Shown here: piece by piece, positions 55,462 to 56,000 of the stretch
Layout: each line of letters begins with the position of its first letter
Numbering within the stretch: position 1 is the first letter of the stretch
From: Octopus bimaculoides
Taxonomy: Eukaryota
Length of the DNA: 63,643 nt
Reading direction: 5' to 3'
Assembly: GCF_001194135.2 (NCBI RefSeq)
Contig: NC_068984.1
Span: forward strand, 30,361,518 to 30,425,160
Notes under the pieces: model-generated
Seen by the model: the letters and a program-made list of their open reading frames with translations, nothing else
The model's database searches: none
Told to the model about the DNA's origin: nothing
Translations under genes and position numbers: made by a program

Positions 55462-56000
55462 AAGCAATGTTAAATCTCTGAACGAGGTACTAACAGTAAC
55501 TGCACGACAAGGTGAAGTATATTTGCCACTTAAATGTGGCTGACCCCTAAGGGTGGATGTTAGTGTTGCTTTTAGCCCCAGGAGAACATCTCCTCCAGCT
55601 GGCTATTGACACACATCTGTGTCCTGTCTGTATTTGCAAAGGGAAGTCATCCTTCCCATCTTGATCTGCGATACGTACGGACTCGAGTTTCTAGGTATTT
55701 ACCTGTCCTCAGCATACGACAATCACGACCTTCGATGCGAAAGATTTCCCTTTGCAAATACTTATATCTTTTTCCAGTGAAATTATTCACTGATCTCGGA
55801 AAAGTGAAAACAAGCAATGTTAAATCTCTGAACGAGGTATTAACAGTAACCGCACGACAACGTGAAGTATATTTGCCACTTAGATGTGGCTGAGCCCTAT
55901 GGGTGGATGTTACTGTTGCTTTTAGCCCCAGGAGAACATCTCCTCCAGCTGGCTATTGACAAACATCTGTGTCCTGTCTGTATTTGAAAAGGGAAGTCAT
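55462..56000 (-). mobile_element. Retrozyme-like tandem repeat, 350-bp period, 1.5 copies visible (variant A)
   Basis: 55462-55650 repeats at 55812-56000 with about 9 differences in 189 bp. It abuts the N gap on the left and (TA)n on the right. Confidence 0.85.
55674..55718 (-). ncRNA. Type I minimal hammerhead ribozyme (variant A)
   Basis: cgtatg-CTGAGGA-C-AGGT-aaat-ACCT-A-GAAAC-TCGA-GTC-cgtacg: palindromic stem III ACTCGAGT, GUC triplet (cut after 55680). Stem I extends to the 16-bp stem 55630-55645/55746-55761. Confidence 0.85.

What the first reader, a model, noticed from the sequence alone, without database searches (positions are those of the whole stretch)
55462..56000. Candidate cephalopod non-LTR retrozyme: 350-bp tandem unit with a hammerhead ribozyme on a 132-nt rod
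Seen: a 350-bp period, a complete type I hammerhead with GUC site, a palindromic minimal stem III, stem I extended through GTGAT/ATCGC, GGTC/GATC and TTCGCATC/GATGGGAA to a perfect 16-bp stem (55630-55761), and no coding capacity. Established: minimal hammerheads with palindromic stem III act as dimers. Tandem hammerhead repeats a few hundred nt long in newts, schistosomes, corals and bivalves are transcribed, self-cleave to monomers and form circular RNAs. Inference: this array yields ~350-nt linear and circular RNAs mobilised by an autonomous retroelement. Only one complete A ribozyme is visible, because the second copy is truncated before its core.
Basis: partly seen in the sequence, partly recalled or inferred. 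Interest (0 to 1): 0.92.

Follow-up and report, generated by a model that had tools for sequence, protein, structure and literature searches.

The report
Hammerhead-ribozyme repeat (retrozyme-type) element
This is a short, non-coding repeat carrying two genuine-looking self-cleaving hammerhead ribozymes, an ordinary member of the animal "non-LTR retrozyme" class that makes small circular RNAs; that it comes from a cephalopod could not be checked.

Summary
On the minus strand there is a 350-nt unit (55462-55811), a 5'-truncated second copy (55812-56000, 95% identical), a complete type I hammerhead (55718-55674, cut after C55680) and a 132-nt rod (55630-55761). The array abuts a 458-N assembly gap. 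Across that gap lies a third, diverged unit (54666-55001, about 65% identical) with a second complete hammerhead (54928-54886). The two ribozymes keep the whole catalytic core while 6 of 9 helix I/II pairs differ by compensatory double changes. An explicit descriptor finds only these two motifs in 63.6 kb, against 0.003 expected. Both have the canonical metazoan architecture: helix I 6 bp, helix II 4 positions, helix III 1-2 bp with a palindromic loop. This is not the Penelope "minimal" type. No RT/GIY-YIG ORF lies within about 8 kb. The element is bounded by (TA)n on both sides and is 5'-truncated, which suggests Penelope-type insertion. Best reading: a small non-LTR retrozyme insertion, a known class already described in molluscs. 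Self-cleavage, circular RNA, genomic copy number and the cephalopod origin were not testable. Rfam scores are below gathering thresholds, and both ribozymes have an unusual C10.1·A11.1 pair.

The parts
54647..54665 (.). (TA)n tract abutting the 3' end of the element (element sense = minus strand)
   Evidence: TRF, sequence, tract list
54666..55001 (-). B unit: a diverged copy (about 65-68% identity) of the same repeat, colinear with A. It runs into the assembly gap at its 5' side. Its 3' end carries an approximately 18-nt AT-rich tail.
   Evidence: blastn 68% over 123 nt; MAFFT alignment, mean column identity 65%; nhmmer E=2e-90 with a profile that includes it
54886..54928 (-). Hammerhead B, type I: helix I UUCAGG/CCUGAA; core CUGAUGA...GAA; helix II C-GAG-CAAAGA-CUC-A; helix III A-CAUG-U (1 bp plus a palindromic tetraloop); GUC site, predicted cut between 54892 and 54891
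   Evidence: pattern and descriptor hits; Rfam Hammerhead_HH9 26.1 bits (gathering 52) on a slice
54839..54976 (-). Rod (long imperfect hairpin) that extends helix I of hammerhead B
   Evidence: RNA fold -66.4 kcal/mol, z=-6.65
55002..55459 (.). Assembly gap (458 N) inside the array. It probably hides about one further unit. The two cleavage sites are 788 nt apart as scaffolded.
55462..55811 (-). A1 unit, one full 350-nt period
   Evidence: circular fold -117.6 kcal/mol, z=-7.6, 63% paired, 43% GC
55674..55718 (-). Hammerhead A, type I: helix I CGUAUG/CGUACG; core CUGAGGA...GAA; helix II C-AGG-UAAAUA-CCU-A; helix III AC-UCGA-GU (2 bp plus a tetraloop; ACUCGAGU is an 8-nt palindrome); GUC site, predicted cut between 55680 and 55679
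   Evidence: Rfam Hammerhead_1 19.0 bits (gathering 34) on a slice
55630..55761 (-). 132-nt rod extending helix I of hammerhead A, ending in a perfect 16-bp stem
   Evidence: inverted repeat I1; fold z=-7.96
55812..56000 (-). A2: a 5'-truncated copy (189 nt, 95% identical to A1). It begins inside the 3' arm of the rod and so lacks a ribozyme.
55999..56010 (.). (TA)n tract abutting the 5' end of the element

Best explanation
The locus 54666-56000 (minus strand) is one small insertion, or two adjacent insertions, of a non-autonomous, non-coding retroelement of the metazoan non-LTR retrozyme type. It consists of head-to-tail ~350-nt units, each carrying a canonical type I hammerhead ribozyme embedded in a long hairpin.

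Shown here:
- The repeat structure.
- Two complete hammerheads on the same strand, whose helices covary while the catalytic core is kept.
- Strong self-pairing of the monomer.
- Absence of any coding capacity or RT/endonuclease ORF.
- A 5'-truncated first copy.
- (TA)n on both boundaries.

Inferred from the family:
- A read-through or unit-internal promoter transcribes the array.
- Helix III is only 1-2 bp, so each ribozyme is weak alone. Two copies of the same type pair through the palindromic helix III (ACUCGAGU or ACAUGU) into a double hammerhead and cut after GUC.
- The released unit-length RNA, with 5'-OH and 2',3'-cyclic phosphate ends, is circularised by a host RtcB-type tRNA ligase. 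It then rests in the stable rod/branched fold that sequesters the core.
- A Penelope-like element's RT/GIY-YIG machinery copies linear multimers or circles into AT-rich/(TA)n targets by target-primed reverse transcription. This gives partial tandems with 5' truncation.

This particular copy is probably old: A1 and A2 differ at 4.8% of positions. Whether it is still active is unknown.
For: - Repeat: a 350-nt period, 189 nt at 95% identity.
- Hammerheads: two complete type I motifs and nothing else in 63.6 kb, with a chance expectation of 0.003 per window.
- Covariation between A and B: 4 of 6 helix I pairs and 2 of 3 helix II pairs are double compensatory changes. All core positions (C3-A9, G12-A14, A15.1-U16.1, C17) are identical apart from the free N7, in units that are only about 65% identical overall. 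A further 11 of 53 consensus pairs in the rest of the unit are compensatory.
- Architecture: it matches the published canonical metazoan type I hammerhead, with helix I 6 bp, helix II 4 positions and helix III 1-2 bp plus a 2-4 nt palindromic loop (PMC4209133). B has the UAC/U internal loop 1 and aligns to Rfam HH9. A aligns to Hammerhead_1.
- Unit properties: length (350), GC (43%) and self-pairing (z=-7.6) match non-LTR retrozymes, which are 150-450 bp with GC<50% and highly self-paired; mussel units are 350-390 bp (PMC7229834).
- Coding: no RT or GIY-YIG in ORFs >=45 aa from 46.5 to 61.7 kb, and no protein homologue of any unit ORF.
- Boundaries: both ends abut (TA)n, p about 4e-4 for two random points. 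PLEs prefer (TA)n/AT-rich targets and insert as 5'-truncated partial tandems (PMC8557442, PMC11167929). A 2026 preprint relates retrozymes to PLE pLTRs (10.64898/2026.07.22.740005).
- Dimer mechanism: the B core fragment cofolds into exactly the double-hammerhead pairing, and the A palindrome duplex is -10.7 kcal/mol. Axolotl HHR_Amex1 and HHR_Amex2, with the same helix III types and a U·U mismatch at the base of helix II, are weak as monomers and efficient as dimers (PMC7229834).
Against: - Rfam scores are well below gathering thresholds (19 vs 34 bits; 26.1 vs 52). There are no hits at all unless the search space is cut to 81 nt.
- Both ribozymes have C10.1·A11.1 where G10.1-C11.1 is 'highly conserved' (PMC4209133). 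This could lower or abolish activity.
- Only 1.54 copies of A are visible, and TRF does not call a tandem repeat.
- The published operational criterion of two consecutive units with complete hammerheads cannot be verified because of the gap.
- A and B cannot form a heterodimer through helix III, and only one complete A ribozyme and one complete B ribozyme are visible.
- The active single-hammerhead fold is much less stable than the alternative fold (-2.7/-1.6 vs -16.2/-13.9 kcal/mol).
- No other copy was found in the window or in any searchable collection. Multi-copy, dispersed status is therefore not shown.
- Nothing on transcription, cleavage or circles could be tested.
Confidence: 0.7

Rival explanations
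1. The repeats are pseudo-LTRs (pLTRs) of a Penelope-like element, either a solo or eroded pLTR pair or a PLE whose ORF is hidden in the assembly gap. On this reading the hammerheads are ordinary PLE terminal-repeat ribozymes rather than part of a separate non-autonomous element.
For: - PLE-like insertion signature: (TA)n target, partial tandem, 5' truncation (PMC8557442).
- Retrozyme consensus sequences in Xenopus are homologous to PLE pLTRs.
- A gap lies exactly between the two hammerhead-bearing units.
Against: - No RT/GIY-YIG signal within about 8 kb on either strand.
- The gap is scaffolded at 458 nt, far less than a ~2.5-3 kb PLE ORF.
- A and B are only about 65% identical, whereas pLTRs of one insertion should be nearly identical, as A1 and A2 are at 95%.
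- The hammerheads do not have the PLE min-HHR architecture of helix II 7-8 bp, helix I 4-5 bp and no helix III (PMC4209133). They have the canonical architecture instead.
Confidence: 0.15
2. This is a decayed hairpin-rich repeat whose hammerhead-like cores are inactive relics or look-alikes. No ribozyme activity or circular RNA arises from this family today.
For: - Sub-threshold Rfam scores.
- A C·A mismatch at 10.1-11.1 in both copies.
- The stable alternative fold outcompetes the active fold.
- 4.8% divergence between A1 and A2 indicates an old insertion.
Against: - A chance origin is excluded by the descriptor control.
- Full core conservation with compensatory changes in both helices, between units 35% diverged, argues that the fold was selected for a long time.
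- A mismatch at the base of helix II (U·U) is tolerated in the active axolotl HHR_Amex2.
- Weak monomeric folds are normal for this class, which works as dimers (PMC4209133).
Confidence: 0.1
3. It is a Schistosoma Smα-type SINE: a tRNA-derived, Pol III-transcribed short interspersed element that happens to carry a hammerhead.
For: Smα-type elements also carry canonical type I hammerheads and are short and non-coding (own knowledge; cited in PMC7229834 as the schistosome case).
Against: - No tRNA-like sequence was found by ARAGORN in 53.5-57.5 kb.
- No B-box match in the unit.
- The units are arranged head-to-tail rather than as single poly(A)- or tail-terminated copies.
Confidence: 0.03

Closest known systems
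Metazoan non-LTR retrozymes (Cervera & de la Peña, NAR 2020, PMC7229834), especially the Mytilus galloprovincialis 350-390 bp repeats and the axolotl Rtz_331/Rtz_353 repeats
   Same: - Head-to-tail ~350-nt non-coding units with GC below 50%.
- A canonical type I hammerhead with helix I of 6 bp, helix II of 4 positions and a 6-nt loop 2.
- Helix III of 1 bp plus a palindromic tetraloop (B, like HHR_Amex1/newt) or 2 bp plus a tetraloop (A, like HHR_Amex2).
- A non-Watson-Crick pair at the base of helix II, as in HHR_Amex2 (U·U there, C·A here).
- A highly self-paired monomer.
- No LTR, PBS or PPT.
   Different: - Only a very short array is visible: 1.5 A units, a gap and one diverged B unit.
- Two subfamilies about 35% diverged sit side by side.
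- The C10.1·A11.1 pair is not described in the texts read.
- Expression, circularisation and copy number are not shown.
- No cephalopod example is mentioned in the papers searched.
Newt satellite 2 / amphibian hammerhead repeats (the dimer-dependent 'double hammerhead' of Forster et al. 1988, as cited in PMC4209133 and PMC7761336)
   Same: ~330-350-nt tandem units. A type I hammerhead with a minimal palindromic helix III that needs a second copy to form an extended helix III.
   Different: Those are very large satellite-like arrays in vertebrates. This is a short dispersed-type insertion bounded by (TA)n.
Penelope-like element pLTR hammerheads (min-HHRs; Cervera & de la Peña 2014, PMC4209133; Lünse et al. 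2017)
   Same: Type I topology, action as dimers, partial-tandem genomic arrangement and a (TA)n/AT-rich target preference. PLEs are the proposed mobilising partner and evolutionary source.
   Different: - PLE min-HHRs have helix II of 7-8 bp, helix I of 4-5 bp, no helix III, an extra nucleotide after A9 and a conserved G10.1-C11.1 pair.
- The motifs here have the canonical 6/4/1-2 bp layout.
- No RT/GIY-YIG ORF is attached.
Rfam Hammerhead_1 (RF00163) and Hammerhead_HH9 (RF02275)
   Same: The core and helix layout align end to end with both models.
   Different: Scores are about half the gathering thresholds, mainly because helix II differs (C·A closing pair and different stem sequence) and helix III is shorter than in HH9.

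Membership tests
Hammerhead ribozyme, type I (canonical metazoan architecture) | Conserved catalytic core: C3 U4 G5 A6 N7 G8 A9, G12 A13 A14, A15.1-U16.1, H17 | tested here: met
   Both A (55712->55680) and B (54922->54892) carry every core nucleotide and a GUC site.
Hammerhead ribozyme, type I (canonical metazoan architecture) | Three helices in type I topology: helix I ~6 bp (open), helix II ~4 bp with loop 2, helix III 1-2 bp capped by a 2-4 nt palindromic loop (PMC4209133) | tested here: met
   Helix I is 6 bp in both. Helix II is 3 Watson-Crick pairs plus a closing C·A, with a 6-nt loop. Helix III is 2 bp plus UCGA in A and 1 bp plus CAUG in B. The helices covary between A and B.
Hammerhead ribozyme, type I (canonical metazoan architecture) | G10.1-C11.1 (R-Y) closing pair of helix II | tested here: not met
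   Both copies have C10.1·A11.1. A comparable U·U mismatch occurs in the active axolotl HHR_Amex2.
Hammerhead ribozyme, type I (canonical metazoan architecture) | Score at or above the Rfam gathering threshold | tested here: not met
   There are 0 hits at gathering thresholds. On slices, A scores 19.0 bits against 34 for Hammerhead_1 and B scores 26.1 against 52 for HH9.
Hammerhead ribozyme, type I (canonical metazoan architecture) | Site-specific self-cleavage | not testable with these tools
   This needs in vitro transcription of monomer and dimer constructs.
Metazoan non-LTR retrozyme | Short tandem repeats of 150-450 bp carrying type I hammerheads | tested here: met
   The period is 350 nt. 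A1 is complete, A2 is partial and B is a colinear diverged unit. TRF does not report the repeat because fewer than 2 copies are contiguous.
Metazoan non-LTR retrozyme | [quoted passage not shown] | tested here: inconclusive
   Two complete hammerheads lie on one strand, 788 nt apart as scaffolded, but they are separated by a 458-N gap and belong to diverged subtypes.
Metazoan non-LTR retrozyme | Low GC (<50%); no LTR, PBS or PPT; no coding capacity | tested here: met
   GC is 43%. No Pfam domain was found and no homologue of any unit ORF.
Metazoan non-LTR retrozyme | Monomer RNA predicted to be stable and highly self-paired | tested here: met
   The circular fold is -117.6 kcal/mol, z=-7.6, with 63% of bases paired. 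Several hairpins are kept by compensatory changes between A and B.
Metazoan non-LTR retrozyme | Many dispersed genomic copies; expression as unit-length linear and circular RNAs | not testable with these tools
   No eukaryotic genome or transcriptome database is available. No other copy exists in the window or in the protein or contig collections.
Penelope-like element (pLTR with min-HHR) | RT plus GIY-YIG ORF flanked by the repeats | tested here: not met
   No RVT or GIY-YIG hit in ORFs >=45 aa from 46.5 to 61.7 kb. The gap is only 458 nt.
Penelope-like element (pLTR with min-HHR) | Min-HHR architecture: helix II 7-8 bp, helix I 4-5 bp, no helix III | tested here: not met
   Helix II is 4 positions, helix I is 6 bp and helix III is present.
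Penelope-like element (pLTR with min-HHR) | Insertion signature: (TA)n/AT-rich target, partial tandem, 5' truncation | tested here: met
   (TA)n abuts both ends and A2 is 5'-truncated. This is consistent with mobilisation by PLE machinery but does not show membership.
Smα-type tRNA-derived SINE with hammerhead | tRNA-like Pol III head (A and B boxes) | tested here: not met
   ARAGORN finds none and there is no B-box in the unit.

The most novel reading that the evidence does not exclude
The A and B units represent a lineage-specific (possibly cephalopod) retrozyme family whose hammerhead has a conserved, functional non-canonical C10.1·A11.1 closing pair. Its unusually long, near-perfect double-stranded rods (132-138 nt, with a perfect 16-bp distal stem) would make abundant circular RNAs that double as substrates or decoys for dsRNA-acting enzymes such as ADAR. 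Mixed A/B arrays would be a way to control which ribozymes can dimerise.
Probability: 0.1. Interest if true: 0.6.

Novelty: new member of a known kind. Interest (0 to 1): 0.35.

Why it matters
If the source really is a cephalopod, this would extend hammerhead-bearing retrozymes to another mollusc class, whose RNA biology (heavy editing, large transposon load) is of wide interest. It would also give a concrete pair of sequences for looking for small circular RNAs there. The A/B pair is a neat natural covariation experiment: the hammerhead fold, including an unusual C·A pair at the base of helix II, appears to have been kept under selection. The (TA)n boundaries and the 5' truncation add one locus-level data point to the recent proposal that animal retrozymes are mobilised by, and derived from, Penelope-like elements. 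None of this changes what is known about the class.

Tried and rejected
- Rfam at gathering thresholds over the whole window: no hits.
- Rfam at E<=10 on 600-700-nt slices: only noise from snoRNA, miRNA and CRISPR-DR models. Hammerhead models appear only on 81-nt slices.
- TRF: does not report the 350-nt repeat.
- Protein-proxy search for other copies: a chimeric query of all unit ORFs in six frames against 5.8 billion proteins gave no hit.
- Organism identification: a chimeric query of LINE, RT and mariner fragments gave only 7 unnamed ENA/JGI proteins at 30-43% identity (six at 40-43%), so the organism was not identified.
- Pattern scan for the C10.1/A11.1 variant consensus: 0 hits in JGI metagenome contigs. 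One hit in a Gammaproteobacteria MAG lacks helix II pairing and was rejected as chance.
They were replaced by explicit ORF strings. The only hit, PhiKZ_gp91 at 16.9 bits against a cut-off of 27, is noise.
- tRNA and B-box search for a SINE head: negative.
- blastn and nhmmer for further copies in the window: only A1, A2 and B.
- Supplement of PMC7229834 searched for CUGAUGAC/CUGAGGAC and octopus: nothing.
- The miRNA-precursor reading of the rods was rejected. MIR5743 and mir-878 hits score 14-18 bits against gathering scores of 80-111.

Full report
**What is in the sequence.** The interval lies immediately to the right of an assembly gap (N from 55002 to 55459). From 55462 to 55650 the sequence repeats at 55812-56000 with a start-to-start spacing of 350 nt. 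The repeat is 189 nt long and 95% identical, with nine mismatches. Tandem Repeats Finder does not list it because fewer than two copies are contiguous. The second copy stops at 56000, where a (TA)n tract begins.

**Hammerhead A.** The 140-nt segment folds at -59.3 kcal/mol, z = -8.0 against dinucleotide shuffles.

A simple core pattern and a full descriptor both pick up a second motif on the same strand, just across the gap. It reads 54922->54892, CUGAUGA-CGAGCAAAGACUCA-GAA-ACAUGU-C, with helix I UUCAGG/CCUGAA. It sits in its own 138-nt rod (-66.4 kcal/mol, z = -6.65). The surrounding sequence, 54666-55001, is colinear with the A unit at about 65-68% identity. I call this unit B.

Read in the sense of the ribozymes (minus strand), the locus is: (TA)n, then a 5'-truncated A2, then a complete A1, then a 458-N gap, then B, then (TA)n. 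The two predicted cleavage sites are 788 nt apart as scaffolded. That is close to two unit lengths, so the gap probably hides about one more unit. That step is inference, and scaffold gap sizes are estimates. A profile of the three units finds no other copy in the window.

**Is it more than chance, and is the fold real?** I wrote a descriptor with these requirements:
- the full core;
- helix I of at least 5 bp;
- helix II of at least 3 bp, with the closing pair allowed to mismatch;
- helix III of at least 2 pairs, counted through the palindrome.

It finds exactly these two cores in 63.6 kb. In 300 dinucleotide shuffles of the window the mean count was 0.003, and one shuffle had any hit.

Comparing A and B gives stronger evidence still:
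- every core nucleotide is the same, except the free N7;
- four of the six helix I pairs are double compensatory changes;
- two of the three Watson-Crick helix II pairs are double compensatory changes;
- the helix III palindromes differ (ACUCGAGU against ACAUGU).

Outside the ribozyme, RNAalifold on the three-sequence alignment predicts 53 pairs, of which 11 keep pairing through changes on both sides. The whole A monomer, folded as a circle, gives -117.6 kcal/mol, z = -7.6, with 63% of bases paired and 43% GC.

Against this, Rfam gives no hit at gathering thresholds and none at E<=10 on 600-700-nt slices. Only on 81-nt slices do Hammerhead_1 (A: 19.0 bits, gathering score 34) and Hammerhead_HH9 (B: 26.1 bits, gathering score 52) appear. 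The shortfall comes largely from helix II, and both copies have C10.1·A11.1 where G-C is usual.

**Which kind of hammerhead, and which kind of element?** Cervera and de la Peña (PMC4209133) define two types:
- The canonical metazoan type I motif has helix I of 6 bp, helix II of 4 bp, and helix III of 1-2 bp capped by a 2-4 nt palindromic loop, and it is active as a dimer.
- The Penelope min-HHR has helix II of 7-8 bp, helix I of 4-5 bp, no helix III, and G10.1-C11.1.

A and B fit the first type and fail the second. B even has the UAC/U internal loop 1 seen in the HH9 and schistosome-type motifs.

The axolotl motifs in PMC7229834 are close structural analogues. HHR_Amex1 has a 1-bp helix III with a palindromic tetraloop, like B. 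HHR_Amex2 has a 2-bp helix III with a tetraloop and a U·U mismatch at the base of helix II, like A with its C·A. Both cleave poorly as monomers (6% and 22% in one hour) and efficiently as dimers.

The same paper describes non-LTR retrozymes as 150-450-bp tandem repeats with GC below 50%, without LTR, PBS or PPT, and with highly self-paired monomers. In mussel the repeats are 350-390 bp. The A unit meets each of the sequence-level criteria.

It found no reverse transcriptase and no GIY-YIG domain. The unit's own ORFs (up to 105 aa, stop to stop) have no homologue among 5.8 billion proteins. A 458-nt gap cannot hold a Penelope ORF. A and B are also far too diverged to be the two pLTRs of one insertion; A1 and A2, which plausibly are products of one event, are 95% identical. 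A tRNA-derived SINE of the schistosome Smα kind is also not supported, since there is no tRNA-like sequence and no B-box in the unit.

**Boundaries.** Both ends of the element abut (TA)n tracts (54647-54665 and 55999-56010). Such tracts cover 1.6% of the window. The chance that two random points both fall within 3 nt of one is about 4e-4. The first copy is truncated at its 5' end, inside the 3' arm of the rod. Craig et al. (PMC8557442) report that Penelope-like elements prefer (TA)n and other microsatellite targets and insert as partial tandems, often 5'-truncated. Frangieh et al. (PMC11167929) find that a Poseidon endonuclease prefers AT-rich DNA. [quoted passage not shown] The boundaries here fit that picture, but a single locus does not prove it.

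**How it most likely works.** Shown here: the anatomy above. The following steps are inferred from the family.
- The array is transcribed.
- Each ribozyme is weak alone. In a 60-nt context the active fold is only -2.7 (A) or -1.6 (B) kcal/mol, against -16.2 and -13.9 for the alternative fold.
- Two ribozymes of the same type pair through the palindromic helix III. The duplex is -10.7 kcal/mol for A and -4.6 for B, and the B core fragment cofolds into exactly the double-hammerhead pairing.
- Cleavage after GUC releases unit-length RNA.
- A host RtcB-type ligase circularises it (PMC7229834).
- The circle rests in the rod/branched fold that hides the core.
- A Penelope-like RT/endonuclease copies it back into AT-rich DNA.

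A and B cannot heterodimerise through helix III. At this locus, cleavage would therefore need further copies hidden in the gap or partners in trans.

**What could not be established.** The cephalopod attribution could not be tested. Transposon-derived coding fragments from the window hit only unnamed metagenomic RT-like proteins at 40-43% identity, and no eukaryotic genome database is available here. No paper in the searchable library mentions hammerheads or retrozymes in octopus or other cephalopods. The 2020 survey did scan RefSeq invertebrate genomes and states that such repeats occur in many phyla, including molluscs. A scan of JGI metagenome contigs for the A/B consensus core found nothing. 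One hit in a bacterial MAG lacks helix II and is chance. Copy number, transcription, cleavage and circular RNA are all untested.

**Verdict.** This is a real, well-formed hammerhead-bearing repeat of the non-LTR retrozyme type: a new member of a known kind, not a new kind. Three points are mildly unusual. The C10.1·A11.1 pair is shared by two diverged units. Two subfamilies sit side by side. The helix I rods are very long and nearly perfect. Interest is moderate to low for a specialist, and it would rise somewhat if the family proves abundant and expressed as circles in a cephalopod.

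Noticed in passing
window 54081-54368 (+): A 96-aa open frame resembling the C-terminal region of a non-LTR (LINE-type) retrotransposon ORF, with a CxxC...HxxxxC motif. It lies on the opposite strand, about 300 nt before the (TA)n that bounds the hammerhead element. Similar pieces lie at 48111-48407 (+), and an RT-like piece lies at 11337-11810 (+). 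A chimeric query containing these hit RT-domain proteins (PF00078) at 40-43% identity. Which segment matched was not resolved.
   Followed up: partly
window 56045-56218, 56727-57122, 747-1156, 33113-33433: A SINE-like repeat recurs at several places. Its translations share motifs such as KNKSWGRF and GYSRRHL.KVP.S.TEPRTMW. Each copy is next to (TA)n/(TG)n microsatellites, and one copy directly follows the hammerhead element.
   Followed up: no
window 52117-52260, 52463-52864, 58939-59193, 10518-10829, 22767-23104, 34841-35158: A second dispersed repeat family, recognisable by the translated motif LDALPNANHS.SV..F.CH, is present in both orientations on both sides of the locus.
   Followed up: no
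window 40264-40605 (-): An open frame with a mariner/Tc1-like transposase C-terminal motif (HSPYSSGLTPSDYHVF). It is probably a decayed DNA transposon.
   Followed up: no
window 54683-54703 (-): Near the 3' end of the B unit is a perfect 10-bp palindrome, UAAAUCUCUC-U-GAGAGAUUUA, followed by a second AT-rich palindrome, GAAAUAU-U-AUAUUUC. The A units have only a 3-bp equivalent at this position. It could be a terminal hairpin or a PLE-type 'tail'; this remains unexplained.
   Followed up: no
window gaps at 1449, 4043, 20742, 27054, 32775, 35674, 55002, 62793: There are eight N gaps of variable, estimated size. Several directly abut (TA)n tracts (for example 1560, 4335, 21092, 27009, 33031 and 35659), which suggests the assembly breaks at microsatellites and repeats. 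Overall GC is 34%.
   Followed up: no
L001 3020-3046 (-), Gammaproteobacteria MAG JASFOJ010000143.1: This is the only public-contig match to the A/B hammerhead consensus pattern. It lacks helix II complementarity and is a chance match.
   Followed up: yes
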